A program made the position numbers and the translations under genes. This document shows, piece after piece, positions 953 through 40,357 of a DNA stretch of 64,000 nucleotides (positions within the stretch are counted from its first letter, which is position 1; each line of letters begins with the position of its first letter). Where the stretch lies: NCBI GenBank assembly GCA_964106645.2, contig OZ067040.1. One strand, 5' to 3'. Source of the DNA: Podarcis pityusensis (taxonomy: Eukaryota). Below the pieces are notes generated by a model. It was not told the origin of the DNA, did no database searches, and worked only from the letters and a program-made list of their open reading frames with translations.

Positions 953-1868
953 GTCCCAAGGACGTTCCCACAAAGACAGTTCCCTGATGGAAAATCCCAC
1001 TGTCTTAAACCGTTGCAACTAATTCTTTCAGCCCTCTAGAGGGAGCAGAACAAAATGTCCAAGTGAGGGAAACAAAGAAGTTAAAGACAAATATATCAGG
1101 AGGCTTGAATATCTTTTTTCCTGTAGATACTCTTTCAACACACTCCAGTATACTGTAGCAATAAAGTCCCAAAACTTTGTATCAAGCAAAACTTTAACCA
1201 TGTAACTTTCCCACAAGTTTCTAAAGACAGTTCAGTGTCCTAATATCTTGTTTGGCAGTCCGTTTCAGTGGATTAAGACAGCGGAAGGCTTTTTTTTTTT
1301 TTTAGGTAGATCATGCAGAATTCTAATGTCCCTTTTCCTCCCCTCTGCCCTGCTTGCTAGAGGGGATCTATATTCAATGTCAGGTTTAAACAGTTCTAAA
1401 TTGCTTCCTGCGGATGCAGCTTTAAAACTCCGTTGCTTTAACTGTCATGCAGTCGGGGGAAGGCAGACTTCCTTAATTTTCACCTTCCCCGTTTTCAGCC
1501 AAATTTCAGGTTTAAATCTTTAGTTCCAGATAGACGTCCAATCTTACTCACGGGTTTTTCAGTCCAAAATTTACAGGAAGGAATCGGCGCTCTCCGTCAA
1601 TGGCGACGCGGCTTCACCCTGCGGTCTGGGTAACGACTCTCAGCACCGCGCTCTCCCGATGCCGTTCCGGAGCCTTTAAAAAGGCTCTTTCGCAGTAAGG
1701 GGGGGCGCTTCTGGTGCCCACTGAGTCTCCTTGTTCACAGGCTTCCGCGCCTGTGATTTTAGGGGTCCCCCGCTTGCCGTAGCGGGTCAGACCCGAACTC
1801 GCAGAGCAGTCCTCCTCCGGAGCTCGGAAAGAGGACCGCCATTAACGCTGGCGCCGACCGGAAGCTAC
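1..1868 (-). mobile_element. LINE-1 element, 5' portion (about 0.9-kb 5'UTR + ORF1), continuing beyond the window
   Basis: L1-like ORF1 preceded by a leader whose first ~300 bp (about 1580-1865) are CpG-rich and begin ...GCTTCCGGTCGGCGCC on the minus strand; the leader is homologous to about 37800-38264. Confidence 0.8.
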
Positions 1869-7365: not shown

Positions 7366-10300
7366 GTAGCAACAGCACTTTTTTGTGGGATCCAGTGATC
7401 ATATAAGTTCTGCTCACAGAATGCTCTTGCTGATGGAACAGGAGACCATTTTAGTTGGTTCCCCCTGATGATGCTTTTAAGAACGTGGTGTACAGTACCA
7501 CAAGATGCTGTAGGGAAAAGGGGGGAATGAGTGAAACCTGTCTCCCACTCTTCCAACGGTGGGAACCTACTGTACATTGGATCAAAGTCCCTTTGATGAA
7601 TGGAAGGTACACCTTCATTAGCAGAAAGGCAACACTGGATATAAACCAATGACAACTTTAACAAAGTCGCTTTTAAGCTGATGAAATTGCTTCAGTATTC
7701 ATATTTTTCTTTTTTTAAACTTTTGTATGTATTTTATGATGCTGGTGTTTCTTGACAAGCATGCTAATGAGAATAGAGATGGGCAGAGTGCTTCTTTAAG
7801 ACAGATCCTCTCAATGGCATTGCCAATTCAAAATACAGAGCCTTGTTCAAGTTTAATGCAGAACCTCATAACAAAGCACCAATTATCAAACAATTTCACG
7901 GCTTGGTTTTTTTTTAAAAAAACACACTAGAATGCTAAATTCTTCAGTGCAGATCAATACAGTGGAGGAAAGAAGCATTATCTTGTGATTGGGAAGGAAA
8001 ACACCAATTAAGCAGGGTGATTAATAAATTTAATAACTGCAGGCTTGAAGTTTTAAAAAAATGTTTTAATTAAATGTCAGAAAAAATGACATTAAAAAAT
8101 GCCCTCCCTGTAATAAAATACTATATTTAAGTTGGATAGGCTGTTGAAAAGTTAACATAAAAATCTTTAACACAGTTCTTATCACTATTTGTACTTTCCA
8201 TCTCCCTTATGGAGTTCCCTCTAGTTTGCCCAGAGGTAAGCATTTTGAAACCCCACTGATTTCGATCTAACACCTGTTGATCTTATCCCTTGCCCAAGTC
8301 CTGCTTTCTGTCTCTGTTGGCATTGTTTTCTTCTTTGACCACATCATCAACCTCTAACTCAGTTCCCACCTCCTCTCTTACTGCATTACACTCAAACTCA
8401 CCACTGTTTGCCACTATCAGCAAACCCTCCCCTTGTCCTTTCTAACACTTGGTCTCTTTTAACCCTCTAACCACCATTCAGCCTCCTGTTTACCATTTGC
8501 TCCAAACTATTGAAACACATTCCTTACTTGCCGAGTACAAAGTTTTCTACTCTGCCTCATCCTCTTGAGAATTTATTCTAAGTTTCTGTGGGAAAGTTAA
8601 ATTATGAAAAGTTTTCACTACAGTTTTCAGTTACTTCTTCAAGATCTTTAGGCATGCAGATATGTACCGTAATTATTTTGGAATCTCGGCACACACTTTT
8701 GTTTTATTTTATTTTTAAAAGCTTTATCAAACCAATTTCACTGTGTGTATATAGTCTACAGAAACATAAAAGTTTATGAAGCCAAGCATAATGGAAAATC
8801 TGCAGAATCTAGTCCCCTTTATGCATTATACTTGTGAAGGAGTTTGATATAATTAGTAGGAAACAGGATTATAACCCTCCACCCTCAGGGTCATGTGCCA
8901 CTCTTAGCCTGCTGCCATATCTCTACACGGAGCACAGATATTTGAAGAGGGGAAGGCTTTGGGGGAGAATTTTATAACTACAATGAGAAGTAGATGAGTG
9001 ACACTTGGACCCTGGTAATTCCTCAGGGTTTGCATTGAAAGTGAGAGTGATGCTTCCTGAATTTGCTTTGTTTGTCTTCAATAGCATCAGCACATTAAAT
9101 CTGATTGGCTACATTGTGACATCATTCCATTCTGACATCATCAATTAATCCCTAATTGTGACAGCCTCTCATAATCCCTAATTGGTTAGGACAATCTATT
9201 TGACAGATGGAAGAAGCATTCTCCTCATCTTCCATGGACTTTGCTTGACCTCAGTGACACTGCAATGTAGCCAGCTCTAGCTCGTTGACTGGGATAGCTC
9301 ATGTAATTAAAGCAGAAAGAACAGGATGCAGTCATTTAAATACAAAAAAGAGCATTGTTACCAAAAGAGCAGCAGAGACAATGGCAGAAAATAGGCTTCA
9401 AAAAAGTGATATGACGGCATAATTATTATGCAATTATATATTGCTTCTATACTAACTTTCTTCTTAATTAGTTGTTTCAATGGGGGTGTTAGGCATTTTC
9501 AAGGTCTCATATTTTAGAATGAAAGGCAGTATATGAATATATAAATATATAAATAGGTCTGGAAAAAATATTACTTCATCCCTGAAAGCACTATTTTCTC
9601 TGTCACTGCTATAATGTTTGTTAACTGTGCTCTGAAAATTGCAAAGAGTGCAAGTGTAAACCCTTTTAACTACAATGATAAACTCTATTTGATGATTTAT
9701 CAGGAGAATTGTTAGACTGGCTTCTAGGCCTGTTAGCATTATGGAAGTAGGTCATTAATCAAAGCTCAAAGAATTCCTAGTACTTCTTACGATAGAAAAT
9801 ATGACAGAGATTTAAAAGATTATTATTTATAATTTATTTTTAAAATCCATAGACCACTTCATGGCATTAAGCCTCTGAAGCAGTGTACAGAGTAAACACA
9901 GAATAAAACTCAGAAACACAAAAAAAGAAAATAAAGAAAAAAGAAACACAAGGTCTAAGAACAATGCAATCAAACTGATAAACTCTAAAACAATAAAACC
10001 ATCCATACAAACAAAAGCACATCATCAAAGATAAAACTGATCTTCTATAAATGACTGGGTTACACTTAGGGAAAGCCTTCCTAAACAAAAGCTTCTTTAG
10101 TAGGCAACTAAGCATCATCATATTTGATTTTGGCTTGTAATTGATTACAGATAGTAGATGCTGCAACAGCAATAGTCCCAGGTTCTAGAATAGGCTAAGT
10201 GAACCTCTGGGGCATATGGTACTCTCAATATAGGCTGCAAATCTACACACACTTACCTTGCAGGAGGTCCTGTTGAACTCAGCGGGGCTTATTCTGAGTA

Positions 10301-10529
10301 GAGATATCTAAGATAGCACCACAAGTCTTTCAGATTTGTTCAGCTGAATATATATTTGACTATATTTGACTTAAATCCTGTGTATATTTAAGATGCAAAT
10401 GGAACAGAGATGAAAGGAAGAGAGGTGGTGACCCCACCCCCACCCCAAAAACCATTTCACGATACATTAGAACATGATATTCAAACTTCAGGATGCAAAT
10501 GCTGTAGTCCTGACTGATCTACTCTTAGC

Positions 10530-10830
10530 TTTCTTGGGTTACTGCACCTTTTAAAGAAAAGCCATAGAAAATCTGGAAAAGATTCAGGGAAGTGTGACAG
10601 ACTGAAAAGTCTTTAATACAAGAAGTGTTTTGAAAGCCTGAAAAAGAGCTGTGTCTTTTATAGGGACAAGGAGGTACATTCTAACACCTGTAAGATGCTA
10701 TTATAAAGATGACGCTAATTTGTTTTCTGTTAACAGAGGAAAGAACAAGGAGTAACAGTTTTAAATGGAGGCGACTCAGGAAGGAACTACATGTTACAGG
10801 TCATACAAGGCTGTCACTGGAAACAGAAAC
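10530..10830 (+). mobile_element. Old CR1 ORF2 C-terminal remnant
   Basis: Degenerate similarity to 32380-32730 (GCACC..TTTAAAGAAAA..CATAGAAAATCTGGAAAAGATTCAG; CTCAGGAAGGAACT). Confidence 0.45.
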
Positions 10831-11114
10831 CTCCAGTTGATTTCTTTCCTAATGCAAAGCAACACTTACTCATGTGACATCACAGTATTGAATGTGCTAC
10901 CACCCACAGCACAACACTGACTGCAGCTGAAAAGAATGGAGAAATGCAAAAGTTGACATCACAACCCAGGTAAATGTCTTGCTACTTGTTAATATAGGGG
11001 GAAAGGATAATCCAGCACAAGGGTGCAATTTTTGGAGGCATCCTCATGTCATAACGTATAATTTTGCCCGGATTTCAAACGTTGCACTCGGCTACGGAAA
11101 CGTCAGCATGAAAT

Positions 11115-16440: not shown

Positions 16441-16690
16441 GCTATTGACCAGGCTCTATGGGTTTGTGTTGCTTCTTTCCCGCTTATGGATGCTGATCCC
16501 CACTTCCTTGTGCCTTAGACTAGACATGTTTCCTTCACTTTCGTGTTAGATTTCTGCCTTCTATTATTTTGTCCTTTTAACTTAGCTATTATTCTGTGTT
16601 TTCTTCTCTCTTGTTTTTTTTGTTTTAGCAAAGGCATTATTTTAACACCCCTTTTCTTCCTTCCTTTCCTCCTCCTTCTTCTCCTTGCAG
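16169..16690 (+). other. GPR6: Putative 5'UTR intron of GPR6
   Basis: Strong acceptor (long polypyrimidine tract ...TTCTCCTTGCAG|G, AG at 16689-16690); candidate donor AGA|GTAAGA at 16169. The acceptor is well supported, the donor is inferred. Confidence 0.6.
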
Positions 16691-16714
16691 GTGGCATACC
16701 TAGCTGTGGCAGAG

Positions 16715-17698
16715 ATGAATGAAAGCATTGCCTTGAATGAAACCAGGAGCCCTGTGCCCTGGATCCAAGCCAGCAACCAGAATTCTTCTCTGGAGCTCTC
16801 TTCCAAGCTCCCCATCTTTACCATCAACCCTTGGGATATTATGCTCTGCATTTCTGGGACCATCATTGCCTGTGAAAATGCGATCGTTGTGGCCATTATA
16901 TTCTACACTCCCAACCTAAGAACCCCAATGTTTGTGCTGATTGGGAGCTTGGCCACAGCAGACCTACTGGCTGGAGTTGGCCTGATCCTCAATTTTGTTT
17001 TCCAGTATGTGATCCAGTCAGAAACCATCAGCCTTATTACAGTTGGCTTCCTAGTTGCCTCTTTTACTGCCTCTGTGAGTAGCTTATTAGCCATCACAGT
17101 TGATCGCTACCTTTCCCTGTACAATGCACTGACTTACTACTCTGAGAAGACTGCTCTCTGTATTCATATGATGCTGATCATCACATGGGGGGTTTCCCTC
17201 TGCTTAGGACTTCTACCTGTCTTGGGCTGGAATTGCCTAGAAGATTATTCATCGTGCAGTATTGTGAGACCCTTGACCAAAAGTAATGTGACCTTGCTGT
17301 CTGCCTCCTTCTTTGTCATCTTTATTCTCATGCTGCACCTGTACATTAAAATCTGCAAAATAGTTTGCAGGCATGCACACCAGATAGCACTCCAGCAACA
17401 TTTTCTGACTGCATCTCACTATGTTGCAACCAAAAAGGGAGTCTCAACACTTGCTATAATCCTTGGGACTTTTGGAGCCAGTTGGTTACCTTTTGCTATC
17501 TACTGCGTAGTTGGAGATTCCCGCTACCCTGCTGTGTACACTTATGCCACACTTCTACCTGCTACCTACAATTCCATGATCAATCCTATCATTTATGCCT
17601 ACAGAAACCAAGAAATTCAGAGGTCTATGTGGGTTCTGTTTTGTGGCTGCTTTCAATCAAAAGTGTCCTTTCGTTCAAGATCCCCCAGTGATGTCTAA
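16715..17698 (+). CDS. GPR6: G protein-coupled receptor 6 (class A, GPR3/6/12 family), 327 aa, single coding exon
   Basis: Seven hydrophobic segments; NPWDIMLC, CENAIVV, LATADLLAG, VDRY, SWLPF, NPIIY; C-terminus CFQSKVSFRSRSPSDV is GPR6-like; adjacent convergent WASF1 matches known GPR6-WASF1 synteny. First ATG after the splice acceptor is 16715; the ORF-track start at 16685 is intronic. Confidence 0.95.
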   Translation: MNESIALNETRSPVPWIQASNQNSSLELSSKLPIFTINPWDIMLCISGTIIACENAIVVAIIFYTPNLRTPMFVLIGSLATADLLAGVGLILNFVFQYVIQSETISLITVGFLVASFTASVSSLLAITVDRYLSLYNALTYYSEKTALCIHMMLIITWGVSLCLGLLPVLGWNCLEDYSSCSIVRPLTKSNVTLLSASFFVIFILMLHLYIKICKIVCRHAHQIALQQHFLTASHYVATKKGVSTLAIILGTFGASWLPFAIYCVVGDSRYPAVYTYATLLPATYNSMINPIIYAYRNQEIQRSMWVLFCGCFQSKVSFRSRSPSDV

Positions 17699-18124
17699 GT
17701 GACTTCTCCTTCTGTGTCGTTTTGCACAAAGTGACAATCTTTGACTTTTGTGAATTACAGTGCCTGGTATGAACCAGATACATGTTGTGAAATTGTTTTT
17801 TGGGGGGAGATGTTTAAACAGTAGCACTTTATGTGTGTGTATTCTTGAGAATGTGAAAAGTCTGAAGCTTTTGGTTGTGTGTGGGGGGGAGGGACCACAG
17901 TGTGGTTGTATACAAGATTGTGCATCACATTTGTAAAGTGGAGGCATTCCAAGACTACGTAATTATAGCACTTTATTTTTAGCTGCTGAACTGCCAAAAC
18001 AGTATTGCCATTTTTAAAGGGCAAAAAGAAAGAGAGAGAAAGAAGAAGTAAAATATTGTCTGATTATTTTGGGATGTGAGTGATAATATATTTTGCTGCA
18101 CAGTATTGACAAATTATGACATTT

Positions 18125-18170
18125 TGTATACAAATAAAACAATTCATTACATATTTTTATTTTGTGTGTT
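18125..18170 (+). terminator. GPR6: GPR6 polyadenylation signal
   Basis: TGTA (18125), AATAAA (18133-18138) and a downstream U/GU-rich element TTTTGTGTGTT, about 435 nt after the stop codon. Confidence 0.65.
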
Positions 18171-21100
18171 GAGCTGATTTAATAGCCTCTAAGAGCCTGA
18201 AAAACCTTTCATGATGCCTCACCTTTATTTACTTGAAAATATGAATTGGGTTTATCCACCCATATGAAATTAGTTTACTTATGCAGAGGAACCATGTCAT
18301 AAAATAAGTTTCTCAAATATACTGTTTTGTTTATTTTGTTTCTATTCAGTAGTAATTTATTTTCTGTAGAGATAAAGCTAATCAAGCATGTGTATAATAT
18401 TAATTCCTCTAAGTCTTTAAAAGGCCTCATCACTATTCTTAGGTAAGATATGAGACTATCAAATAAAATTGTTTCAGGAGAGGAAGCAAGATCAAAGAGT
18501 TATTCTGATTCTCAGATGATGGTTGCAGCTCACAGGGAGATGATTCTATATGAGTGTCATTGAAATCTTCAAGAGTTCCAATTAATTTCCATTCATTGGG
18601 GGGGGAGGGGTAGCATCAGAGAAAATTTCTATATTTTCCCATTTGACCTCCTTTGTGGCTTAGTTTTGATTTGGTCCATGTTTCCTTCCTGACACACCTG
18701 CGCAAGCTCATAATAAATTGATTTCTGTCACAATCCACAGGCCCTAGGTGCCTCTTTTTGTCTGTCTTTGTCTGACCAATTCTTCAGGGTGACTTATGCA
18801 CAGCTTGCTGGCTGTGTGCATTAGGCCACATTGTGATATAACCCATTCACTTATAATAAGTCATTTTTTTCCAGAAGCAGCAGGTGAGAATTACATCTTA
18901 GCTTGGAAGGACTTGCACAGCTGAATCAAAATGAATAAATAAACCAATACTTTGAAACCATAGTGTATTGCAGTATACGTCTAGATTCAGAGTATCCTTG
19001 GGAGAGTTCCTACTTAACTAGAGTCAAATGATTATTTATTATCACTTCTGCTTTTAATTTAAAAAGTGCAGCTATCTAAAACATCTCTAATAAGTTCTAG
19101 AAAGCAGATTCCATATTTTTTTTCTAGGTCATAAATTCTTTAAAGTATATTAATCCAGATGCAATCTTTTTAAAGAAAGAAACAACCTATAGTTTAGACC
19201 AAATCATCCGGCATTTGCATCCTGCAGCAGTAGAGACTCAAAAACCCAAAACTGCATGAACACTTTGATCCAGTAACATTAAAATGAGGAAAACATAAAC
19301 ATGCTAAAATTCAAGGTTAACAAAATCTGGGAACTGATAGAAATTTCTCCAATCCAGTGAAAGCAATATATTCATGGGAAATAGTTCCTCTGACAGCAAG
19401 AGTAGACACACTTTTTTCTCTTGAGTGAGGGCTGCATTTCATTGGGTAATTTGTCAGGCTGCATACTGGTAGTGAGTGTGACTGAGGCAAAAGTAAATGG
19501 GACCAAAGTTTGGCAGGATTGCTTATTTTCTCTCTTCCAACTCTTTCGTGCTGTTTTTCACTTCCTTGCCATCTGCATGAAATTAAGCAGAGACACATGA
19601 CATGAGAGGGCAATATGCAGCTCTACAACCTATGACTTGTATGGATAATGGGGGGGGGGCAGGGAGGACCCTGGATTCAATAGCTGCAGCATTCAGACTC
19701 CTGCAGATTTTTAAGGGATGGTGACACCGTTTTGCCACGAAAATTATGAAATTAATGCATAAATTAATGCAATGCCATTCACTTGTTGAGACATGGATTG
19801 GGTGTGGGGGGAGAGAGTATGAATATAGTCTCAAAACATCTGGAGGGCCAAGGTTGAGGAAGCCTGATCTAGTAGTTACCCCTTCCCTTCCTCCAAGTTG
19901 CTGAACAAATCAGCAGAAGTATTGCTCTGCTAGCACTAGTTAGGTAGAAGGACAGGCTCTGTGAGAGTTTGGTTGTGTTGGCAGTTCCCTAAACTGGAGC
20001 AAATGAGTATATTGTGAGTAGAATGTATATGTTAGTTTTAATATCTGCAGCGGCTACACAACATCATTTGGCAACAAAGACTGTAAAGACCAAATCTTTT
20101 GGATCAGGTGATCCCTACATCTCTCGCTCCTCCCACTTACATAAGTATAGACCAAGAAATACTACATAAAAATAGCACCAATGTAATTTTCACTTGGAGA
20201 GCACCATGCTTGAAATACAAATTTAGTCCATTGCTTAAGTATCAAACAACTGTAGAATGCCAAACATCAGGTATTTAGATGTAAAGACCTAGTTAGGCGA
20301 TCTGTAATTATCAAAATGAGGAAATGAAAGGCTATTTCACACAGGCATGCATGCCACATGATCTCCCACCACTTTATTGTTCAACTTTTGACGACTCGCA
20401 GTGTGAACTGCTTTTACTGGAAAGTATTGCATTTGAGGTGACATGAAACCTCTGCTTGTATTTGACCTGGGAAGGCTTTTTCCATACAACAAAGCCATCA
20501 TCTGGCATGTGGTCATCAAAGGATGAAGCATGTATAAGCAGTGCCAACTAGTTTCAAGGAATAATACTGCTTACACTGTACCTACGTAGTGTATATAACA
20601 TCAGATAGACAACAATCTTTTGTCAATTTTTGGCTATTTGATCATCAAGCTGTGCTAATGATATGTGAGCAATGTCTTTACTTGCTACTTATATAATCCT
20701 GCTCCACCATTACCAAAATACAATAAATTTACAGTACACCAGCATTTACTGAATAAGGAATAAGCTGTACATAAACAAGAGGCAATAGTTCCACTGATTG
20801 ACATCTAATTCATTTCACATAATCTTTTGTGATATTGTTAAGTTGTGCATCTTTTACAATGCATGCAAATGTTTATTGAATGTTAAGGTGTGAAAACATG
20901 GGCAGAGCAATCCTTTACTCATATTGCTTTGGGACCAGATACAGTATATGCCGCTGCTACATTGGTAGAATTGCTACCATATCCAAGGTGTGCTCAGGAG
21001 GGGACAAGGAAAATACACAAGCAGAAAATACAAAAATTGGCAGACATGTCATCAGCAGTCATGGGAATTCTGCCAATACCTGAGAATCCATGTTCTACAC

Positions 21101-27349: not shown

Positions 27350-29239
27350 TAAAATGACTGTATAGAATTTTTTAAAAGCCAAAGGTTTCTTGATAATTTG
27401 AACAATGACTTACTAAAACTTCTTCCAAAAGGGTTTGATTACTGGGCATTTCCACCAGACATAAATAACATTACCCATTATTATCTCCTATTTGTTATTA
27501 TTATTATTATTTTATATATCAAATCAACATGCTGTTAAGTGCCACTGATACAGTATTTTATAATGATTTCCTTTTAAAAGGAATTTCAAAGAAGGCTGCA
27601 TTCTTCTCTCCTTACAAAAAGCAAGAACAGAATTCAACTAAATGTTGCTGGTAGACAGTTCCTGGAAAATGATGTACTTTATTTTACACTGAATAGTGAT
27701 AAGGTGTCTCATTACCAAATTTACACATTTTCCCAGGCCACAGTTCTCAGGTGTGACTGCTTTTCAATTGTTACTCTGATAAACTGCATCCTTATAAGGA
27801 ACAAACTAATTCTGTGCTGTATCATCTTAGTGAACATTCATAGGGAATTATAGGAGAAGAAATAATAAACGGTGGTTGTATTGACCAGAGCTTGGATGAC
27901 TATTTAAGTAGGAATTTAGGTTTTGCTCTGATAAGTGATTAATTTCATGACACATTTTGTATGACTAAATATTTACCACAGTTGTAATAGTAGCAAGTAA
28001 TCTTCTGCATCACAGGAAAATAAATAATAAGATTGCCATACCTGCAGGGAGATATGATTTGTCTCTTCTGGTTAATGTTATATACTGTAGGGAAAAGTGA
28101 ATCTATTTACAACTTAATGCTACGAAAAAAGGCGTACTCCACAAGATCTAAGAGGTAAGAAAATTAAATTACTCTGAATTCATTAATCTGCTCAGAGGAG
28201 AGATCTTCAGCATGGCTAACCCTTCCAGATTTTGAGTTATTATTTCCATAGAACCAGAAATTTAGGATGAAAGTCAGTTTATCAACTCCGGCTCTCAGAC
28301 CTAGCGCAAAGTATCCTTACCATGATGTCTGGAGGCAGTTCTGGGATGGATGTCAGCAGAGGCTTAATCCAGATAAAATGGAAGTGATATAGAAGGGTGG
28401 GAAACCTGCTGATCTGAATCGAACTGAAAGACAAAGTTTTCACACAGTGTTGTTGTTTTACCTGTACTTGGTGCTATCTGTGGAGGCACAGGTGGTATTG
28501 GTTATCAAGGGTGCCCTTTACTAAATTCAGCTGATATATCAGCTGCATCCCGATTTGGGAAAATGGAACTTGCTACAGTCATTCAATGCCCTGGTTGCAC
28601 ACTCTGTGCATCTGCCTTTAAAGAAGCTTCAGCTGCTGAATAATGCAGATGTCTGGTTGTTTTTGAGCGTATATAGGCAATCAGAGCATATAACACCAAT
28701 TCTGTGCCCAGCTGCACTGGTTGCCAGGGTTAGAGAGAGCGGTTTGGAAGAGATATCCTTACTGTTTTGTAAAAGAGTTAGCACAATGGTTATTGCTCCA
28801 AGCGCATTAAAACTTGGTTAGATTGCAAATAAGTGAATGTTTTACTCACAGAGTTTCCAGAAGTTGCATCAAACAAGTCTCCATCTGTTGGCAGGAAAAC
28901 AAAGGAGAGAGAAAATGTTCCAAATGACTTAAACAGAAAAATAATTGGTTTCCGTACAAAAAGGATCATTCAATATTCGGGTTAGCAAAGATGCAGACTG
29001 TAAAATCTCCTTCAAGAAAGTTACAGTTCACTTGCAGGGAGCCATGGCCACATGGCTTCTCGCTTGCTCCAGGGAGCATGAAGAGAGAAGAAGAAAGGGA
29101 TGGGGCAGAGGTTGTCCAGAGCCTGCTAAACCATACCCATGCTGGCGACTTGAGCTCAGGACTCAGATTAACCCTTTCATGCACCCAAGTGTTAGTCAGT
29201 AACTGTATATTGCAGCAGCCAGTGCATTTCCAAAGCCAA

Positions 29240-29878
29240 TTTGAAGATCTCTCCCTCATTACAGTCGATCAGGTATATGAAGACGAGCAGCAAAGTCAGT
29301 CCTCAGGGAATGTGCAGGCGACCTTGGAGCGGACAGCTCACGAAAGAACCCCGACCAAACCTAAGAGGAGGCGTGTAGTGGTGATAGGGGATTCCCTACT
29401 GAGGGGAACAGAAGCAGTGATCTGTGGGCCTGACAAGATGTCTCGGGAAGTGTGCTGTCTCCCCGGGGCTAAGATCCAAGATGTAACTGAACGACTGCAA
29501 GGAATCATAAAACCCACTGACAAATACCCCTTCCTCTTGGTTCATGTGGGAACCAATGACACTGCAAGCAATAGCCTCCAGAAGATCAAAAGAGACTACG
29601 AGGCTCTGGGCAGGAAATTGAAGCAATTAAATGCACAAATTGTGATCTCATCTGTCCTCCCAGTTGAACGACGTGGCCCAGGGAGAGAGGGGAAAATAGT
29701 GGAAGTGAACAGCTGGCTTCGCAAATGGTGTAAACAGGAACGGTTTGGATTCTTAGATCACAGACTGCAGTTTCTTGAAGATGGACTTCTGGCAAGCGAT
29801 GGGCTGCACCTCACAACGGTTGGGAGAAATGTTTTTGCCAAAAATCTCAGAAACCTCATCTGGAGGGCTTTAAACTGA
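29240..29878 (+). CDS. CR1 ORF1 C-terminal part, SGNH/GDSL esterase-like domain (5'-truncated)
   Basis: [11 protein letters not shown] (block I), CLPGAKI (II), HVGTND (III), SDGLHL (V). Confidence 0.85.
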
Positions 29879-29883
29879 CTAAT

Positions 29884-32805
29884 GTGGGGGAGGGAGACAG
29901 TGCTCCTGAAGGTAGGAGTCTATCAATTGATGAAGATGATCATCCAAATGTCATAGACCAAATGGAGCAAACAGCACACAGACCTAGTGGTGGGAGGAAA
30001 AAATCCTTAAATAAGAGTCACGGGGGAATGATTAATGGACTTCAATGTCTGTACACTAATGCGCAAAGCATGGGAAATAAACAAGATGAGCTTGAGCTCT
30101 TGGTACAGCAAACTAAATATGACATAATAGGCATCACTGAAACCTGGTGGGATAAGTCCCACGATTGGAATGTAATAATGGGGGGATACAATCTATTTCA
30201 GAGAAACAGACCAGACAAGAAAGGAGGAGGAGTGGCGTTATATGTCAGGGATGTGTATACCTGTGAAGAGATCCAAGATTTAGAACCTCAAAGCCAAAGT
30301 GAGAGCATTTGGGTCAAAATTAAGGGAGAGAAGAATAACAGTGACCTCATTGTGGGAGTTTACTATAGATCCCCAAGCCAAACGGAGGACATAGATGATG
30401 CCTTCCTGGAACAGATGGCCAAGCATGCAAAAGGAAGGGAGATAGTAGTAATGGGGGACTTCAATTACCCGGATATTTGTTGGATGTCAAACTCAGCCAA
30501 GAGCATAAGGTCAAACAGATTCCTCACTGGCCTTGCAGACAACTTCATTGTCCAGAAAGTGGGAGAAGCAACAAGAGGAACAGCCATTTTAGATCTGGTC
30601 CTAACCAATGTTGATGACCTGGTTAGTGGGGTAGAAGTGGAAGGATCATTAGGTGCGAGTGATCATGCTCTTCTGAAGTTTACTATACAGCGGAAAGGAG
30701 CAGCCAAGCATACTAGGACTCAATTTCTTGACTTTAAGAAAGCAGACTTCATAAAACTTAGGGAAGTGCTGGGTGAGATCCCATGGACAGTAATACTAAA
30801 AGGAAAGGGAGTTCATGATGGCTGGGAGTTTGTTAAGAGGGAGATACTAAAAGCACAACGTCAGGCAATACCAATGAGACGGAAACATGGAAGGTGCCTA
30901 AAGAAGCCAGGGTGGCTATCTAAAGAACTTTTAACTGAGTTAAGATTAAAAAAGGATGTGTACAAAAAATGGAAAAGGGGGGAAACCACCAAAGAGGAAT
31001 TCAAACAAATAGCCAGCACGTGTAGACACAAAGTCAGAAAAGCTAAAGCACAGAATGAGCTCAGGCTTGCTAGAGAGGTTAAAAGCAACAAAAAAGGCTT
31101 TTATGGGTATGTTTGTAGCAAAAGGAAGAACAAAGAAACAGTGGGGTCACTCAGAGGAGAAGATGGTGAAATGCAAACAGGGGACACAGAAAGAGCTGAA
31201 CTCCTCAATGCCTTCTTTGCCTCAGTCTTCTCCGATAAAGAAAACAATGCCCGACCTGAAGAATTTGGAGCAAATGATTCAGCAAAGGAAACACAGCCCA
31301 GAATAACTAAGGAGATAGTACAAGAATACTTGGCTAGTTTAGATGTATTCAAGTCTCCAGGGCCAGATGAACTGCATCCAAGAGTATTAAAAGAACTGGC
31401 AGATGTGATCTCAGAACCACTGGCAGTCATCTTTGAGAATTCCTGGAGAACAGGCGAAGTCCCGGCAGACTGGAGGAGGGCAAATGTTGTCCCTATTTTC
31501 AAAAAGGGGAAAAGAGAGGACCCAAATAATTACCGCCCAGTCAGTCTGACATCAATACCAGGGAAGATTCTGGAGCAGATCATTAAGCAAACAGTCTGTG
31601 AGCACCTAGAAAGGAATGCTGTGATCACCAATAGTCAGCATGGATTTCTGAAAAATAAGTCATGTCAGACTAACCTGATCTCGTTTTGTGACAGAATTAC
31701 AAGCCTGGTATATGAAGGGAACACAGTGGATGTAGCCTACCTTGATTTCAGCAAGGCATTTGACAAGGTGCCTCATGATATTCTTGTAAAGAAGCTGGTA
31801 AAATGTGGTCTTGACTATGCTACCACTCAGTGGATTTGTAACTGGCTGACTGACCGAACCCAAAGGGTGCTCATCAATGGTTCCTCTTCATCCTGGAGAA
31901 GAGTGACTAGTGGGGTGCCACAGGGTTCTGTCTTGGGCCCGGTCTTATTCAACATCTTTATCAACGACATGGATGATGGACTCAAGGGCATCCTGATCAA
32001 ATTTGCAGATGACACCAAATTGGGAGGGGTGGCTAATACCCCAGAGGACAGGATCACACTTCAAAACGACCTTGACAGATTAGAGAACTGGGCCAAAACA
32101 AACAAGATGAATTTTAACAGGGAGAAATGTAAAGTATTGCACTTGGGCAAAAAAAATGAGAGGCACAAATACAAGATGGGGGACACCTGGCTTGAGAGCA
32201 GTACATGTGAAAAGGATCTAGGAGTCTTGGTTGTCCACAAACTTGACATGAGCCAACAGTGTGACGCGGCAGCTAAAAAAGCCAATGCAATTCTGGGCCT
32301 CATCAATAGGAGTATAGCATCTAGATCAAGGGAAGTAATAGTGCCACTGTATTCTGCTCTGGTCAGACCTCACCTGGAGTACTGTGTCCAGTTCTGGGCA
32401 CCACAGTTCAAAAAGGACATTGACAAACTGGAACGTGTCCAGAGGAGGGCAACCAAAATGGTCAAAGGCCTGGAAATGATGCCTTATGAGGAACGGCTAA
32501 GAGAGCTGGGCATGTTTAGCCTGGAGAAGAGGAGGTTAAGGGGTGATATGATAGCCATGTTCAAATATATAAAAGGATGTCACATAGAGGAGGGAGAAAG
32601 GTTGTTTTCTGCTGCTCCAGAGAAGCGGACACGGAGCAATGGATCCAAACTACAAGAAAGAAGATTCCACCTAAACATTAGGAAGAACTTCCTGACAGTA
32701 AGAGCTGTTCGACAGTGGAATTTGCTGCCAAGGAGTGTGGTGGAGTCTCCTTCTTTGGAGGTCTTTAAGCAGAGGCTTGACAACCATATGTCAGGAGTGC
32801 TCTGA
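29884..32805 (+). CDS. CR1 ORF2: APE-type endonuclease + reverse transcriptase, 973 codons without a stop
   Basis: EN motifs YTNAQS, GITETWW, GDFN, SDH; RT motifs [36 protein letters not shown]. The listed start is GTG; the first in-frame ATGs are at 29962 and 30028. Confidence 0.95.
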
Positions 32806-35077: not shown

Positions 35078-36117
35078 TATTGAATAAGGCAGTGAACTTG
35101 GCTTCTTATTTTTGTAGCACGAATTTAGCTATCAACCCACACACTGGCATATCACCATAACTTTGAAATTGCCATCTTGCCACCCCTTCACTGAATGCAG
35201 TTAATAAAAACCAATCTGTGTTAATCCTTTAGTTGACCAGATCCAGGACTTCTTAAAACATGAGAAAATCAATCTTTGTTAACACATGCTACTCAGTGAC
35301 TAATGGTTGTAAGATTTATTTAGCACCAGCATATGCAAAGTTCTGAAATATGGGGGAGATGGGATGGAAATTAAAATTCTGAATGTGCATACACTGAAAA
35401 CAAAACAATTTCTTATACGACTCCTTGCATTCTCTTCCAAATTGGACAGCTTGTTGACTTCTGTGTTCTGGACTCATTGTGCTGCCAACCCAGCATTATA
35501 ATACTGTCAGTTTTAATTATGCTAATTCATTCTCCTGATGACACTTCATGCTTGGAAAACCCACTGCTTCCATTGACGCAAGATTACAGTGTCATACGCC
35601 CAGTGGTATTTTGGTCTTTCTTTGCTGCTTTTTCCTTTCTCAGTAAATTTCAGCCTGGAAGTGATTGGATTTGCAACTGAAATGGAGTCAAACTAATGAA
35701 CTACAATGTGTAACCAAGCTAACTTGAAAAAAGCTTCATGTCATCTTTTAATACTCAATGGAGCTTGTGCTGTATAACTGTGGCTGCAGTTGGTTAATAG
35801 GCTGCTGATCTAGATGGACCGGTAACCTGACCTGGTAAAAGGCATGGCCCTATATTCCTACAATCATATCAAACTGTGCCAACTTCATGCATCTGTCTAC
35901 TGCAAAAATGCAAATAAAACTATAAACAAAACTGCTGATTGTTTTTTAAATCTTAATATCCTGGGTACCTGGCGGCAAGTCATACTGGTGTGCATGATCC
36001 CATGGCACAGGCTGGCATGTAGTCCAGCAAGCCAACAAGTCCAAAGTCCAGGTTCCTACCCCAGCAGCTGATCCAGAGGTCAGCATCTGGCAGTCAGTCC
36101 CACACAAGCAAAGTCTC

Positions 36118-38264
36118 TCTTTTTTTTATAAGATATTTATTGAGATTTTCAAAATGCTACAAAATAAAAATAATAATAATAAAAAAAGAAAATACAAAAT
36201 AAAAATGGTTAACAAAGTAAACAAAGAGAGAAACAAACCCTTCCAACAATACGAATACAAATTCAAAATAAGAAAAAAAACAGAAAAAGACAAAAATACA
36301 CCACAAACATTTAAAAACATTTAAAAACAAATTCATTATTCTCAAATCCTCAACTGTCATTACCTTCTTTCTTTGACCTCCTCCTCCTCCCTTTCTTTGT
36401 ATCCTAGTTATTAATTATCCCAGCAAATCCTTTCCATATTTCATAATATTCTGTCGTTACATTACCTTAAACTGTTTTAATCTTATCTTTTTATATAAAA
36501 AAAGAAACCTTAAAACTTAAAGCTTAAATCTTATCCTTACCAACTTCTCATAACCATAATATTCTTTCATAATTCTTTAGGCATCTTTACTAAAGCTGAG
36601 TAATTTCATTCCAACATTTTTCTAACATTCATCAATTTTATAAAACAGTCCTAATAGTAAAAAAAAAAGAAATACAAACAAATCCAATCTTCATCCAGCG
36701 TCCCTTCCTCCTGGTCCCGGGTTTTGTCAGTCCTTATTATCCCATCGATCTAGCGCATTAACCTGGCAACCTTATATCCGAGGCCCTCAAGTCTCTTCCA
36801 TGTCCCTTCCGCAGCTCTTCTTCATATTTGTAACTGTATTTTCCCTTGTCTCCTGCTCGTGGTAACTCCAGCTTGACAATATTTTTGACCCTTCTCGACA
36901 GATCAGCCCCTTTTCCATATTCAACACTAAATTCCATGTGATATTTAAAAACATGTTTCAAAAACCCTCCAAAATTAAGAGCCCCCACAATCCCAAACAT
37001 CTCACGGCCCATTGCCAGATTTGAAAAGTCCAAACATCCCAGCATAGGGGGGTCAATCCAGCCCCCCATTTCCAAGCCAAACCAAACTTTTTCTTTCCAA
37101 ATCTGGCTTTTTCCAAGTTCATTTGTCAAATCCGAAAGCTCATATTCCTGTTGGGCCTGTTCTGTCAGGACACACTCCTGATTTAATTCCTGGGTGGGCT
37201 CCACATATTTTCCCACTGTCTGTTCAAAATTTCCCACTGCCTGTTCAAAATTTCTAGTCGAAGTCACCATCAAATTCATCTTCTCATGTAACTGTTCCAG
37301 TAGGACATTTGTTTTATAGAAAGCGCACAACAGAGCTTCTGAATACATTGTCCTGCAAGGTCAAATGTCTGTTCCCACGATTGTAATCTGTAACAGCTGC
37401 CGGCTCCCTGGAATTGGTTACAGTTTCACAGTCTCCCTCTAGGGGGAAAGCTTCTATTTGTTCTTGCAACAAAGTTTCCCTTTTTGAGATATTTTGTCAA
37501 TATTTGTTCCTTTAAAATGCGAAAGGAAACAGTGGAATCACTATGTTTCTCTTCTTTTAGCTATCTGTCAAAAACGTTTGTCTCTGGTCAATGAGCTTCA
37601 AACGTCTGTCCTGACACCCCGCTCCAGGATCAGGATGGTGGAAAGTTACTTTACTTTAAACTCACTTTAAACAGTCCGAAAAAGATCCCCCTTCTTCTCC
37701 TGCTGTCGAAGGGGGGTTCCACAATTTTAAATGATGAAATCCAATCCTTTAAAGGCGATTTTCTAAGCTCTAGTTTACGTTGTCTTTGCTTTATTCTGTC
37801 TACAAAAGAACGGAAGACTGACTTCCTGTTTAGACCTTCCCGTTCAGTACCAAATTGAAATAAATTTTTAAATCCAATTCCTTTCTGCTCGCAAGTCCTT
37901 ATTTAAGGTCCAGTTGTTCAAAGTTTAACTACTCACAGGTGCTTATTTTAGAGTCCAAATTGTCCCAGGAAAAAGGCAGCGCTCTCCGGCAACGGCTATG
38001 CGGCTTCGCTCCACGGAAATAGCAGTTAACTCACAGCACCGCGCCACTTCCCCCTCTTCACTTTGGAGCCCGTTAATGGGTTCCTTTGCGAGTTGGGGGG
38101 GCGCTAAAGGTGCCCGCCGAGTCCCAAGGTCACAGGCTTCATCCGCCTGTGATTTTTAGAAGGGTCCCCACTTCGCCGTAGCGGAGAAGACCCGTTTTCC
38201 GCGGAGCTAGTCCCTCCAATTCAGAGGGAGTCCACCATTGCCGATGGCGCCACCCCGGAAGTCC
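36118..38264 (-). mobile_element. Full-length non-autonomous L1-related retroelement (HAL1-like), 2147 bp
   Basis: 19-bp TSD CCCACACAAGCAAAGTCTC (36099-36117, 38265-38283); AATAAA (36136-36141, minus) plus short A tail; 5' end GGACTTCCGGGGTGGCGCC with leader homologous to the L1 at about 1450-1865; a single long ORF, no EN/RT. Confidence 0.85.
36758..37348 (-). CDS. 196-aa ORF of the non-autonomous element; N-terminal predicted coiled coil, remainder unrecognised
   Basis: ATG-initiated, at the position equivalent to L1 ORF1; 21-bp tandem duplication (37210-37251) encodes a heptad repeat NFEQAVG/NFEQTVG. Confidence 0.55.
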   Translation of the reverse strand: MYSEALLCAFYKTNVLLEQLHEKMNLMVTSTRNFEQAVGNFEQTVGKYVEPTQELNQECVLTEQAQQEYELSDLTNELGKSQIWKEKVWFGLEMGGWIDPPMLGCLDFSNLAMGREMFGIVGALNFGGFLKHVFKYHMEFSVEYGKGADLSRRVKNIVKLELPRAGDKGKYSYKYEEELRKGHGRDLRASDIRLPG

Positions 38265-40357
38265 CCCACACAAGCAAAGTCTCAAAGAGAGCCCTGGAAC
38301 ATCCAAGATGTGGCCCAACCAATATGGGGACTTGAGCAAACACAGCTCCATAGCTCTACTGCCCCTTTTATACTCTGCATGCTGATTTCAGCCTCTGAGC
38401 TTGATGAGGCATGTGACCCTCACTTGTTCCAGCTGAGGAATCACATCCTTCTTTCCAGAGCCAATGAGCCCCACCTGGCTAGCTAGGGAGCTGGGCTGTG
38501 GACCCTTGCCTGCCTCAGTCTCCTAGAGCATACCTCCTTACACCTCAAAGCCTGCTGTATTCGGGGAGACAGGGGCCTCTCTGGCTCTGGTGATGGGTCC
38601 TGCTGCTCTGGTTCCTATGCACTGACCCCATCCCCTCGCTATCCTCCACTGAACTGTGAGTACTTTCTACACCAACCTCTCCTTCTCCATTCCCATCTTG
38701 CCCCAGTGCGTCTCATTAACCCCTTGCTGGGTTCCTCTTCCTTCTTGCCTTTGTCCTGCCAGTTCATGACACTTAAGCTATATAGTTTTTAACATCTGAT
38801 TTTATTGGCAATTCGGATCAGTAATTTATATTTTATGTAAAACACTTAGAGGTTTTGACAATTAAGTGGTATATAAATTCTGTTAAATAAAAAGCATAAA
38901 TATGTGGGAACAGTTCTATAGCTGGCATATGGCTGGTTGAAGGGCTGTGGGAAGCAGTGTGCATGTCACTGCAGCGACAGAAAGGAAGACCAACCTACAA
39001 GATGGTACTTTCATTACCAGAGAACAGGTACTCCTGCAGGAAAATGGCCACAGGTGAGTCATGCTCTAAGAAGTTGGGCAGGGCCATCCATTTAACTTTT
39101 TTATCCTCAAAGTGACCCCCAGTGTGAGATTTATGGTGAGAAGGTGGATCCACTCCATTCTTTCATAATTTAGTGGGAGTGATTCATCATGGGCTAACTG
39201 TAGTGACAAGGCATGGTGAAACTGGGTTTGGTTCTAAGGGGTCTTTTGGCTGCTCCCATGTGCTATTATTGGAAATAGGGAACAGACTCTTTCTATGCAT
39301 TGGAGTGGCATTTTTGGTGATCTCAATGTTACTACTGTGATGTCAACTTGCTATTTATCTGCTGCTTGAATTTATAACTGCATTTTAAGTAATATTGTCG
39401 CTGTTAGTGCTAATTTGATATTGGATGAGGTGGATATGTGATTTTGCTGACCTATTAGCATGGCAATGAGAGTTTATTCCCCAGGGTATATTTCCAAGGT
39501 AAACTGGGAGGACAAGAGCCTCGGGCGGAAGTTAGAGAAATAAGTCAAATTCCTCATATGGAGAGTAGACTTATTTGCTGGAGCTCAATTATGTTGCATT
39601 AGAGATGTGAGAGATGGTGTGGCTGGATCAGGCTGTAATTAAGTAACTGCACTTATTATAATATCATGTGCTTTTTACTGAGTCTTCTTTTGGTTGCCTT
39701 CTCCGCTCAAAGCTCTGTAGTCCCAGAGCAACCTGTTTTATTTTTACTTGGATTGTGGCCAATGTGTGTACACTGCTTTCCACACCAGCAGTGTGAGCAC
39801 ATTGGATGCACAGTAAAATGGAATGCATACACCTAGATGTCTTTGAGCAGAGGTGATAGTGGGACAAATGAAAATACTATGATGGCCTCACTCTGTCAGG
39901 AGAAAGGGAGACTGAGAGGAGACAACATGGCACCCCTTTAAGAAAAAGTTTTCAAAAACAACAACATACAAACAATAAAGAAACAAAAACAATGGCTGTA
40001 CGGAGCACATTATTGCAGTTGAAATAAAATAAAGGTTTGGTGCACTTTTGCAAACATCAAATTAAGAGTCAATTAAGGGTGGTGCTGAAAGCCTTCTAGT
40101 AAAGGCAGTACACTGAAGCTGCTTGCCAGGTGGAACAGAGCCACAACACTAGATTCCCGACAGATGGGGCACTGTTGCTTACCTGTGAGGGAAAGGACTA
40201 GGGGCAAGGAAGCAGAGAGGTCAACACAGTGCAAACACACCAGCAGGAACACAGATTGTCTCCACTGTACAGCTCTGACCTCCCCTCCCCTTGCCTCTCC
40301 TGGTAAATAACAGTCACCCACCTGTCAGGGCACTGTGTTTCAATGTAATACTTTTTG

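What the first reader, a model, noticed from the sequence alone, without database searches (positions are those of the whole stretch)
36118..38264. Complete L1-leader-driven non-autonomous retroelement encoding an unrecognised 196-aa protein
Seen: the hallmarks of target-primed insertion (19-bp TSD, AATAAA + A tail, pyrimidine|purine target TTT|GAGA) and a 5' leader that aligns block by block with the L1 at the window start (e.g. GCGCTCTCCG, GCGGCTTC, CAGCACCGCG, GGGGGGCGCT, TCACAGGCTTC, CGCCTGTGATTTT, GCCGTAGCGG, CCGGAAG). It has no ORF2, and its single ORF has a helical N-terminus but none of the RRM/CTD motifs visible in the neighbouring ORF1p. Established: HAL1 ('half-L1') elements are ORF1-only L1 derivatives mobilised in trans. 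Inference: this may be a squamate family that kept the L1 promoter and a coiled coil but replaced or heavily diverged the RNA-binding half. Such a protein could co-oligomerise with L1 ORF1p to hijack or restrict L1, forming a parasite/helper pair with both partners in this window.
Basis: partly seen in the sequence, partly recalled or inferred. Interest (0 to 1): 0.8.

Follow-up and report, generated by a model that had tools for sequence, protein, structure and literature searches.

The report
Lizard half-L1 with cut-down ORF1
This is one complete copy of an abundant lacertid-lizard "half-L1": a 2.1-kb jumping element that kept the promoter-leader, the tail and a heavily pruned first gene (ORF1) of an L1 retrotransposon, lost the copying enzyme, and so must borrow that enzyme from full L1 elements.

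Summary
Window 36118-38264 (minus strand) is a complete retroposed unit with a 19-bp target-site duplication, AATAAA and a short A tail. It starts at the lizard L1 5' consensus (GGACTTCCGG...), has one 196-aa ORF and no ORF2.

It is a family, not a one-off. Two more full-length, TSD-flanked copies lie at other Podarcis lilfordi loci. One DNA run laid 11,248 contigs on the element and none on its flanks.

The "unrecognised" protein is a diverged, internally deleted L1 ORF1p (profile-profile 98.3%, E 2e-14). The coiled-coil helix is kept but shortened, about 40 residues of the RRM core are missing, and the CTD is only partly recognisable. The 3' part keeps about 100 nt of the ORF2 end, out of frame, followed by the L1 3'UTR.

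So this is a HAL1-like non-autonomous L1 derivative of lizard "clade 1" L1.

Selection on the ORF is suggested but not proven. Deeply diverged lineages keep 182-215-aa ORFs ending ...RDLRASDIRLPG (182 aa is the shortest of the deep members). Among close copies, however, omega is 0.57-0.66 against 0.68-1.68 in control frames.

Co-oligomerisation with L1 ORF1p is untested. The L1 at the window start is not the closest helper.

The scan found this family before on other DNA of this genome (s1-722477 and others).

The parts
36099..36117 (.). Target-site duplication, copy next to the poly(A) end (cccacacaagcaaagtctc on the + strand)
   Evidence: Identical 19-mer at 38265-38283; read
38265..38283 (.). 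Target-site duplication, copy next to the 5' end of the element
36118..36127 (-). Short poly(A) tail (A8 followed by GA) at the 3' end of the element
   Evidence: the same 3' terminus ...TTCAATAAATAT...A(n) is seen in copies L001 and L005
36137..36142 (-). AATAAA polyadenylation signal
36120..36493 (-). A-rich 3'UTR homologous to the 3'UTR of an autonomous lizard L1 (element nt 1772-2145)
   Evidence: blastn to L009 19264-19513: 65% over 249 nt (E 8e-14); last 79 nt 84.8% (E 6e-21)
36601..36735 (-). Remnant of the last ~100 nt of L1 ORF2 plus its stop. It is out of frame with the element's ORF and lies downstream of that ORF's stop.
   Evidence: Element nt 1530-1582 and 1622-1664 align to L009 19085-19137 and 19166-19208; the ORF2 stop is at L009 19185-19187. 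tblastn gives TDKTRDQEEGTLDEDW against ORF2 TGRIQDQGEESVEEDW in frame 1534 mod 3, unlike the ORF frame.
36758..37348 (-). 196-aa ORF: a diverged, internally deleted L1 ORF1p (coiled-coil helix kept, RRM core missing, partial CTD, conserved tail ...RDLRASDIRLPG)
37211..37252 (-). 21-nt tandem duplication (one mismatch) that adds exactly seven residues (NFEQAVG/NFEQTVG) to the helix. It marks a subfamily and is shared with copies L003 and L005.
37349..38264 (-). 916-nt 5' leader derived from a lizard clade-1 L1 5'UTR
37929..38264 (-). CpG-rich 5' end of the leader (GC 58%, CpG o/e 0.84), starting GGACTTCCGG. This is the most L1-like part and the presumed internal promoter.
   Evidence: 82.7% to the 5' end of the L009 L1; CpG statistics; consensus GACTTCCGGTGN8ATGGCG for lizard clade-1 L1 in PMC5381506
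1..1866 (-). 5' part of an L1 (5'UTR 953-1866; ORF1 from 952 running off the window start). It is a relative of the helper lineage, not the closest one.

Best explanation
The insert is a full-length member of a high-copy, lacertid-lizard family of 'half-L1' (HAL1-like) non-autonomous retrotransposons. The family arose from a lizard clade-1 L1 by loss of nearly all of ORF2. What remains is the L1 5'UTR (internal promoter), a pruned ORF1, about 100 nt of the ORF2 end, and the L1 3'UTR with AATAAA.

Inferred life cycle: transcription starts at the conserved GGACTTCCGG terminus and the RNA is polyadenylated. ORF2p made by autonomous L1s then captures it in trans, nicks a relaxed TTTT/AA-type site and reverse-transcribes it by target-primed reverse transcription. 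Here that gave a 19-bp TSD.

The 196-aa product is an ORF1p remnant. It has a confident N-terminal helix homologous to the ORF1p coiled coil, followed by a degenerate RRM/CTD region that has lost the RRM core and is not predicted to fold.

I judge it more likely than not (about 0.55) that an open ORF is needed for propagation. The need could come from translation of the RNA or from the helical protein itself. The rest of the statement does not depend on that.
For: Shown:
- TSD, AATAAA and A tail.
- Two further full-length copies with their own TSDs at unrelated P. lilfordi loci: L001 (86.6% identity, TSD AAAAGTATGACTCAnGCGA after ...TT) and L005 (90.4%).
- One DNA run laid 11,248 contigs on the element and none on either flank. 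Words of this copy occur in runs of at least 7 coded organisms.
- The 5' 336 nt are 82.7% identical to the 5' end of a P. lilfordi L1 that carries ORF1 plus an EN-domain ORF2. The 3' part is collinear with that L1's ORF2 end and 3'UTR.
- hhalign of the family (9 sequences) against lizard L1 ORF1p (16 sequences): probability 98.3%, E 2.1e-14, 203 columns. hmmsearch of the family profile against six-frame ORFs hits only the two ORF1 frames, 49 and 25 bits. A joint MAFFT alignment is collinear.
- The ORF1p alignment itself hits mouse L1 ORF1p 2ldy (E 6e-4) and trimeric coiled coils.
- AF2 with the joint alignment: residues 1-48 helical at pLDDT 87-95, residues 54-172 under 50.
- Deep lineages (P0005-P0010, 25-41% identity to the window ORF) keep 182-215-aa ORFs with the same ends. 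Their contigs carry the L1 leader upstream (L006) and the ORF2-tail remnant downstream (L007).
- Neutral simulation: at 0.5 substitutions/site only 3.5e-4 of ORFs stay open, counting substitutions alone.

Inferred: trans-mobilisation by L1 ORF2p, promoter activity of the leader, and translation of the ORF.
Against: - No autonomous partner is shown to be active, and the only L1 in this window is partial and 69% identical in the leader.
- Coding constraint among close copies is weak. The ML omega is 0.57-0.66 in the real frame against 0.68-1.68 in the five control frames. The ORF is not better conserved than the leader between the window copy and L001 (88% against 94%).
- Copy L005 is frameshifted, and part of the contigs in a DNA run carry 1-nt deletions inside the ORF.
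- All protein-database members were found because they have open frames, which is ascertainment bias.
- RNA evidence is only contigs from runs whose RNA status is a guess.
- I could not compare with Repbase or Dfam.
Confidence: 0.88

Rival explanations
1. The structure and mobilisation are the same, but the ORF is a decaying relic with no role. The family would spread as an essentially non-coding, polyadenylated RNA carrying an L1 promoter, and open frames are seen only in young copies and through ascertainment.
For: Omega is 0.57-0.66, close to the +1 control frame at 0.68-0.80. The C-terminal two thirds are not predicted to fold. The RRM core is deleted. Frameshifted copies exist. About 20% of neutral copies at 6% divergence would still be open by chance.
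Against: Lineages that differ by more than 0.5-1.5 substitutions per synonymous site still carry ORFs of 182-215 aa with conserved first and last motifs. Four members at 90% identity or more, all intact, sit in one deep lineage. Chance retention at 0.5 substitutions/site is 3.5e-4 before counting indels. Indels between subfamilies are all in frame: 21, 54 and 15 nt.
Confidence: 0.32
2. The retained coiled-coil helix lets the protein form mixed trimers with L1 ORF1p. It would either gain entry to L1 ribonucleoprotein particles (hijack) or poison them (restriction).
For: Only indirect. The helix is homologous to, and collinear with, the ORF1p coiled coil. It is the only confidently structured part. 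A subfamily indel adds exactly one heptad.
Against: There is no positive evidence. The coil is shortened by about 35 residues relative to ORF1p and is about 25% identical to it. In known L1 biology, trans-mobilised RNAs such as Alu and processed pseudogenes do not require ORF1p mimicry (established knowledge, not tested here).
Confidence: 0.1
3. It is a one-off product: a single internally deleted or chimeric L1 transcript inserted once.
For: Only one copy lies in this 64-kb window.
Against: Three TSD-flanked full-length copies lie at different loci, thousands of contigs match in DNA runs, and diverged subfamilies share the same architecture. Earlier notes of this scan report the same kind of element at other places in this genome.
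Confidence: 0.01

Closest known systems
HAL1 ('half-L1') elements of mammals (Smit 1999; Bao & Jurka 2010, as cited in PMC5753468 and PMC5322556)
   Same: Both are L1-derived with an own internal promoter-leader, encode only an ORF1 homologue with no EN/RT, carry a poly(A) tail and TSDs, are multi-copy and depend on L1 ORF2p in trans. HAL1 is reported to have arisen independently several times.
   Different: The host is a lacertid lizard and the parent is a lizard clade-1 L1, so the origin is independent. The ORF1 is cut down to about 200 aa: it starts at an internal Met, has a shortened coil and has lost the RRM core. A ~100-nt ORF2-end remnant is retained. I found no paper describing HAL1-like elements in squamates, but I could not check Repbase or Dfam.
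Lizard 'clade 1' L1 families (L1_AC of Anolis; Boissinot & Sookdeo 2016, PMC5381506)
   Same: Both have a long 5'UTR with a CpG-rich start and the conserved terminus GACTTCCGGTG...ATGGCG, an A/T-rich 3'UTR ending in AATAAA and poly(A), and the ORF1p coiled-coil/RRM/CTD order.
   Different: There is no ORF2 and ORF1 is pruned. Total length is 2.1 kb instead of about 6 kb.
L1 ORF1p (mouse 2ldy; the human trimer structures are recalled from memory, not tested)
   Same: The N-terminal helix is homologous to the trimerising coiled coil, and the order of remnants follows ORF1p.
   Different: The invariant RRM block (RDCLITLR...KDIP in lizard ORF1p) is absent. There is no Pfam or PDB sequence hit and no confident fold beyond the helix.

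Membership tests
HAL1-type (ORF1-only) non-autonomous L1 derivative | 5' and 3' ends derived from an autonomous L1 | tested here: met
   5' 336 nt are 82.7% identical to the L009 L1 5' end, and 69% to the L1 in the window. The 3'UTR and ORF2 end are collinear with the L009 L1.
HAL1-type (ORF1-only) non-autonomous L1 derivative | Encodes an ORF1p homologue | tested here: met
   hhalign probability 98.3%, E 2.1e-14 over 203 columns against lizard L1 ORF1p; hmmsearch 49 bits to the ORF1 frame only. The homologue is truncated.
HAL1-type (ORF1-only) non-autonomous L1 derivative | No endonuclease/reverse-transcriptase ORF | tested here: met
   No other ORF of 150 aa or more lies in 36118-38264. Only a ~100-nt ORF2-end remnant is left.
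HAL1-type (ORF1-only) non-autonomous L1 derivative | Poly(A) tail, TSDs and an L1-type target, in several independent insertions | tested here: met
   Window copy, L001 and L005. The repeat boundaries coincide with the TSDs in read depth.
HAL1-type (ORF1-only) non-autonomous L1 derivative | Mobilised in trans by L1 ORF2p | not testable with these tools
   Inferred from the insertion hallmarks and the absence of an own RT.
Mammalian HAL1 lineage (descent from the Repbase HAL1 families) | Sequence descent from mammalian HAL1 or mammalian L1 | not tested
   No mammalian HAL1 sequence was at hand. The leader and ORF group with lizard L1, so an independent origin is inferred.
L1 ORF1p (functional RNA chaperone) | Trimerising coiled coil | tested here: inconclusive
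   The homologous helix is present at pLDDT 87-95 but is shortened. Oligomeric state was not shown; the complex job gave no verdict.
L1 ORF1p (functional RNA chaperone) | Intact RRM domain | tested here: not met
   About 40 residues holding the invariant RDCL..R..E..KDIP columns are deleted in all family members. pLDDT is under 50. There is no Pfam or PDB hit.
L1 ORF1p (functional RNA chaperone) | C-terminal domain (FRWEFPQGLSF block) | tested here: inconclusive
   It aligns to GLE..RDL..N.K in the older lineages and to KLELPR in the window copy. It is not predicted to fold.

The most novel reading that the evidence does not exclude
A retrotransposon parasite has kept, over deep divergence, only the coiled-coil helix and a short conserved tail of ORF1p because this mini-protein co-assembles with the helper's ORF1p trimers. 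That would give the half-L1 RNA access to L1 particles or dampen the helper. It would be a protein-level mimicry layer in LINE parasitism that known SINEs, SVA and mammalian HAL1 do not show.
Probability: 0.1. Interest if true: 0.7.

Novelty: new member of a known kind. Interest (0 to 1): 0.4.

Why it matters
HAL1 elements are textbook only for mammals. A lizard family with the same logic shows that ORF1-only parasites of L1 arise repeatedly wherever 'relaxed', poly(A)-recognising L1s are active.

This family also goes further than the mammalian case. The ORF1 has lost its RRM core, yet an open frame with conserved ends persists across deep lineages. That makes it a natural experiment on what part of ORF1p, or merely its translation, a trans-mobilised L1 RNA needs.

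For annotation, these 2.1-kb units will be mis-called as 'hypothetical proteins', as in P. lilfordi, or fused into false gene models such as P0004.

Tried and rejected
- Pfam on the ORF and on all nine family members: no meaningful hit. The Pfam L1 models also miss genuine lizard ORF1p, so this blank says little.
- BLASTP against the neighbouring ORF1p: nothing. Only profiles see the homology.
- Profile against PDB sequences: nothing.
- AF2 with 5 sequences: pLDDT 33, unusable. With 28 sequences only the N-terminal helix is confident, so no fold search was run.
- Exhaustive HMMER over 1.84 billion representatives with the 5-sequence profile: only 8 hits, all family members, and no ORF1p at E up to 0.001.
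- Complex prediction of two copies of the L1 ORF1p coil (P0023 56-165) with residues 1-80 of the ORF: no verdict (score 0.27, mark 0.34). This is neither for nor against binding.
- Nei-Gojobori dN/dS of 0.29-0.45 looked like constraint but is inflated by a transition bias of kappa about 4.4. The ML codon model with frame controls is much weaker.
- Twelve listed population variants in the ORF split 5 synonymous to 7 non-synonymous, too few to decide.
- Origin of the conserved tail RDLRASDIRLPG from the ORF2 end in any frame: not found. A resemblance to the ORF1p tail motif DIANLSFGLP is only suggestive.
- P0014 (P. muralis) could not be fetched.
- Bao & Jurka 2010 is not held in the library.
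- Repbase and Dfam were not available.

Full report
**What is in the sequence.**
On the minus strand, window 38264 to 36118 is a 2,147-nt insert.
- It is bounded by a perfect 19-bp direct repeat at 36099-36117 and 38265-38283.
- It begins GGACTTCCGGGGTGGCGCC and ends in AATAAA, 13 nt, then A8 and GA.
- The reconstructed empty site, ...CTCTTT|GAGACTTTGC..., puts the first-strand nick at 5'-TCTC/AAA-3'. That is a relaxed form of the L1 endonuclease target.
- The insert holds one ORF of 150 aa or more, 36758-37348(-), 196 aa. It holds nothing resembling an endonuclease or reverse transcriptase.

**The leader is an L1 5'UTR.**
- blastn aligns element nt 4-319 with the 5' end of the L1 at window 1-1866(-) at 69% identity, E 1.4e-19. 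Nothing else in the 64 kb matches.
- A four-way alignment shows further conserved blocks to about nt 640.
- The first 330 nt are GC 58% with CpG o/e 0.84.
- Boissinot & Sookdeo 2016 (PMC5381506) give GACTTCCGGTGN8ATGGCG as the conserved 5' terminus of lizard 'clade 1' L1, with long, CpG-rich, alignable 5'UTRs. The element, its relatives and the two L1s examined here all start this way.

**It is a family.**
The word search found related ORFs in Podarcis lilfordi and in Logan contigs. I fetched their DNA.
- L001 (P. lilfordi OX395127.1) holds a full-length copy, 86.6% identical over nt 2-1980. It has its own TSD (AAAAGTATGACTCAnGCGA, preceded by TT), AATAAA and poly(A).
- L005 holds a third full-length copy, 90.4% identical. 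It has its own TSD and poly(A) and a 2-nt insertion that breaks the ORF.
- All three copies begin within 1-2 nt of the same 5' nucleotide.
- Contigs of one DNA run laid 11,248 pieces on the element and none on either flank. The depth boundaries fall in the bins that contain the TSDs.
- Sampled words of this very copy are held by runs of at least seven coded organisms in 12 studies.
- A one-off deleted L1 is excluded.

**Both ends and the middle come from one L1 type.**
An L1 in P. lilfordi (L009) has its 5' end near 9057 and ORF1 (P0023) at 10001-11113. An Exo_endo_phos ORF follows ORF1. The ORF2 stop is at 19185-19187 and poly(A) lies near 19513. A nested foreign insertion sits inside.
- Its first 336 nt match the element at 82.7%.
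- Collinear with that, element nt 1530-1582 and 1622-1664 match the last ~100 nt of ORF2 and its stop.
- Element nt 1772-2145 match the 3'UTR; the last 79 nt are 84.8% identical, E 6e-21.
- The ORF2-end remnant lies after the element's stop codon and in another frame.

So in this copy there is no ORF1-ORF2 fusion protein, unlike what some other first-stage notes propose for look-alike elements.

**The 'unrecognised' protein is a pruned ORF1p.**
Simple searches are blank:
- Pfam;
- BLASTP against the neighbouring ORF1p;
- PDB sequences;
- an exhaustive HMMER search with the 5-sequence profile, which found only eight family members.

With the deeper members added, the picture changes.
- The family profile hits exactly the ORF1 frames of L009 (49 bits) and of the window's L1 (25 bits) among all six-frame ORFs.
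- hhalign of the 9-member family alignment against 16 lizard L1 ORF1p sequences gives probability 98.3%, E 2.1e-14, 203 aligned columns and 24% identity.
- The ORF1p set is anchored to mouse L1 ORF1p (2ldy, E 6e-4) and to trimeric coiled coils.

The joint alignment shows five features.
- The element's Met corresponds to an internal Met of ORF1p (MSSEDVLALALGKINESLENL against MYSEALLCAFYKTNVLLEQL).
- The coil is about 35 residues shorter.
- The first RRM half is recognisable (EFKIVSAFRLG against MFGIVGALNFG).
- The ~40 residues carrying the invariant RDCLI.LR..EERDKIL...KDIP block are absent in every family member.
- The CTD block FRWEFPQGLSF is partly kept in older lineages (GLE.hRDLffN.K) and further eroded in the window's subfamily.

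AF2 agrees. With the joint alignment, residues 1-48 form a helix at pLDDT 87-95 and residues 54-172 stay under 50. With five sequences nothing is confident.

**Is the ORF maintained?**
Evidence for:
- Six lineages with 25-41% identity to the window ORF (P0005, P0006, P0007 with three members at 90% identity or more, P0008, P0010) keep 182-215-aa frames. They share a similar start and the same end...G.(E/G)RDLRASD(I/L)R.PG.
- Their contigs show the L1 leader upstream (L006: 75.6% to the window's L1, E 1e-47) and the ORF2-end remnant downstream (L007: KDYLQKYCKI). The architecture is therefore old.
- Indels between subfamilies are all in frame: 21 nt (exactly one heptad), 54 nt and 15 nt.
- A substitution-only simulation leaves 3.5e-4 of ORFs open at 0.5 substitutions/site.

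Evidence against:
- Among the closer copies the ML codon model gives omega 0.57 (4 sequences) and 0.66 (5 sequences) in the true frame. The five control frames give 0.68-1.68.
- The lower Nei-Gojobori values (0.29-0.45) are inflated by kappa of about 4.4.
- The ORF is no better conserved than the leader.
- Broken copies exist.
- Every database member was ascertained through an open frame.

I put about 0.55 on the ORF being needed for propagation.

**Mechanism.**
Shown: structure, homology, copy number and insertion hallmarks. Inferred: everything about activity.
1. The element is transcribed from the L1-type internal promoter and polyadenylated.
2. Its RNA is probably translated into a coiled-coil mini-ORF1p.
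3. ORF2p from autonomous clade-1 L1s copies the RNA into the genome by target-primed reverse transcription.

Noll et al. 2015 (PMC5322556) independently predicted a relaxed, poly(A)-recognising L1 system in lizards, which fits. Whether the mini-protein coats its own RNA, joins L1 ORF1p trimers, or matters only because translation keeps the RNA at ribosomes is open. The one complex prediction I ran gave no verdict, and I do not count it either way.

**Comparison with the known, and novelty.**
By every structural criterion this is a HAL1-type element (see the membership table). HAL1 is described for mammals and is said to have arisen several times (PMC5753468). I found no paper on squamate HAL1-like elements, but I could not consult Repbase or Dfam.

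The parent is a lizard L1, so the origin is independent of mammalian HAL1. The loss of the RRM core is the distinguishing trait.

This scan has already met the family on other DNA of the same genome. Note s1-722477 and its follow-up reached the same reading, and several other notes describe 2.2-kb 'mini-L1' units. I reached my reading from my own tests before seeing them.

**Verdict.**
The 'new protein' is a degraded ORF1p.

The finding is of moderate interest. It is a new (squamate) member of a known kind, with one unusual and testable feature.

Noticed in passing
window 28991-32805 (+): Apparently intact CR1-type LINE. ORF1 is 295 aa with a GDSL-esterase/OSK-like domain, directly followed by a 973-aa ORF2 with Exo_endo_phos and RVT_1 domains. 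Another first-stage note (s1-729628) concerns the ORF1/ORF2 junction.
   Followed up: no
window 16685-17698 (+): A 337-aa single-exon ORF with a full rhodopsin-family 7TM domain (7tm_1, E 3.5e-32; weak olfactory-receptor hit). It is probably an intronless GPCR gene.
   Followed up: no
P0029 / P0030 (Podarcis muralis proteins, not in this window): These are TRIM39-like gene models with RING and B-box domains. Residues 192-454 of P0029 are 71% identical to lizard L1 ORF1p P0023 residues 104-370, up to the last residue. This is either an annotation chimera caused by an L1 insertion or a TRIM-ORF1p fusion with TRIMCyp-like logic.
   Followed up: partly
L005 476-5042 (P. lilfordi CANTUW010000783.1): The deposited gene model P0004 ('hypothetical predicted protein', 251 aa, about 14 tiny exons) is stitched partly from a frameshifted copy of this half-L1. 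It is a false gene model caused by the repeat.
   Followed up: partly
L009 about 17400-18190 (P. lilfordi OX395131.1): The reference L1 used here carries a nested fragment of another LINE's reverse transcriptase inside its ORF2, which is why it spans about 10.4 kb.
   Followed up: no
L006 1-422 compared with window 1555-1866: The leader of a deeply diverged half-L1 lineage (the P0007/P0013 group) is closer to the window's autonomous L1 leader (75.6%) than to the leader of the window's half-L1 (71%). This hints that half-L1 lineages track, or exchange leaders with, different L1 families.
   Followed up: no
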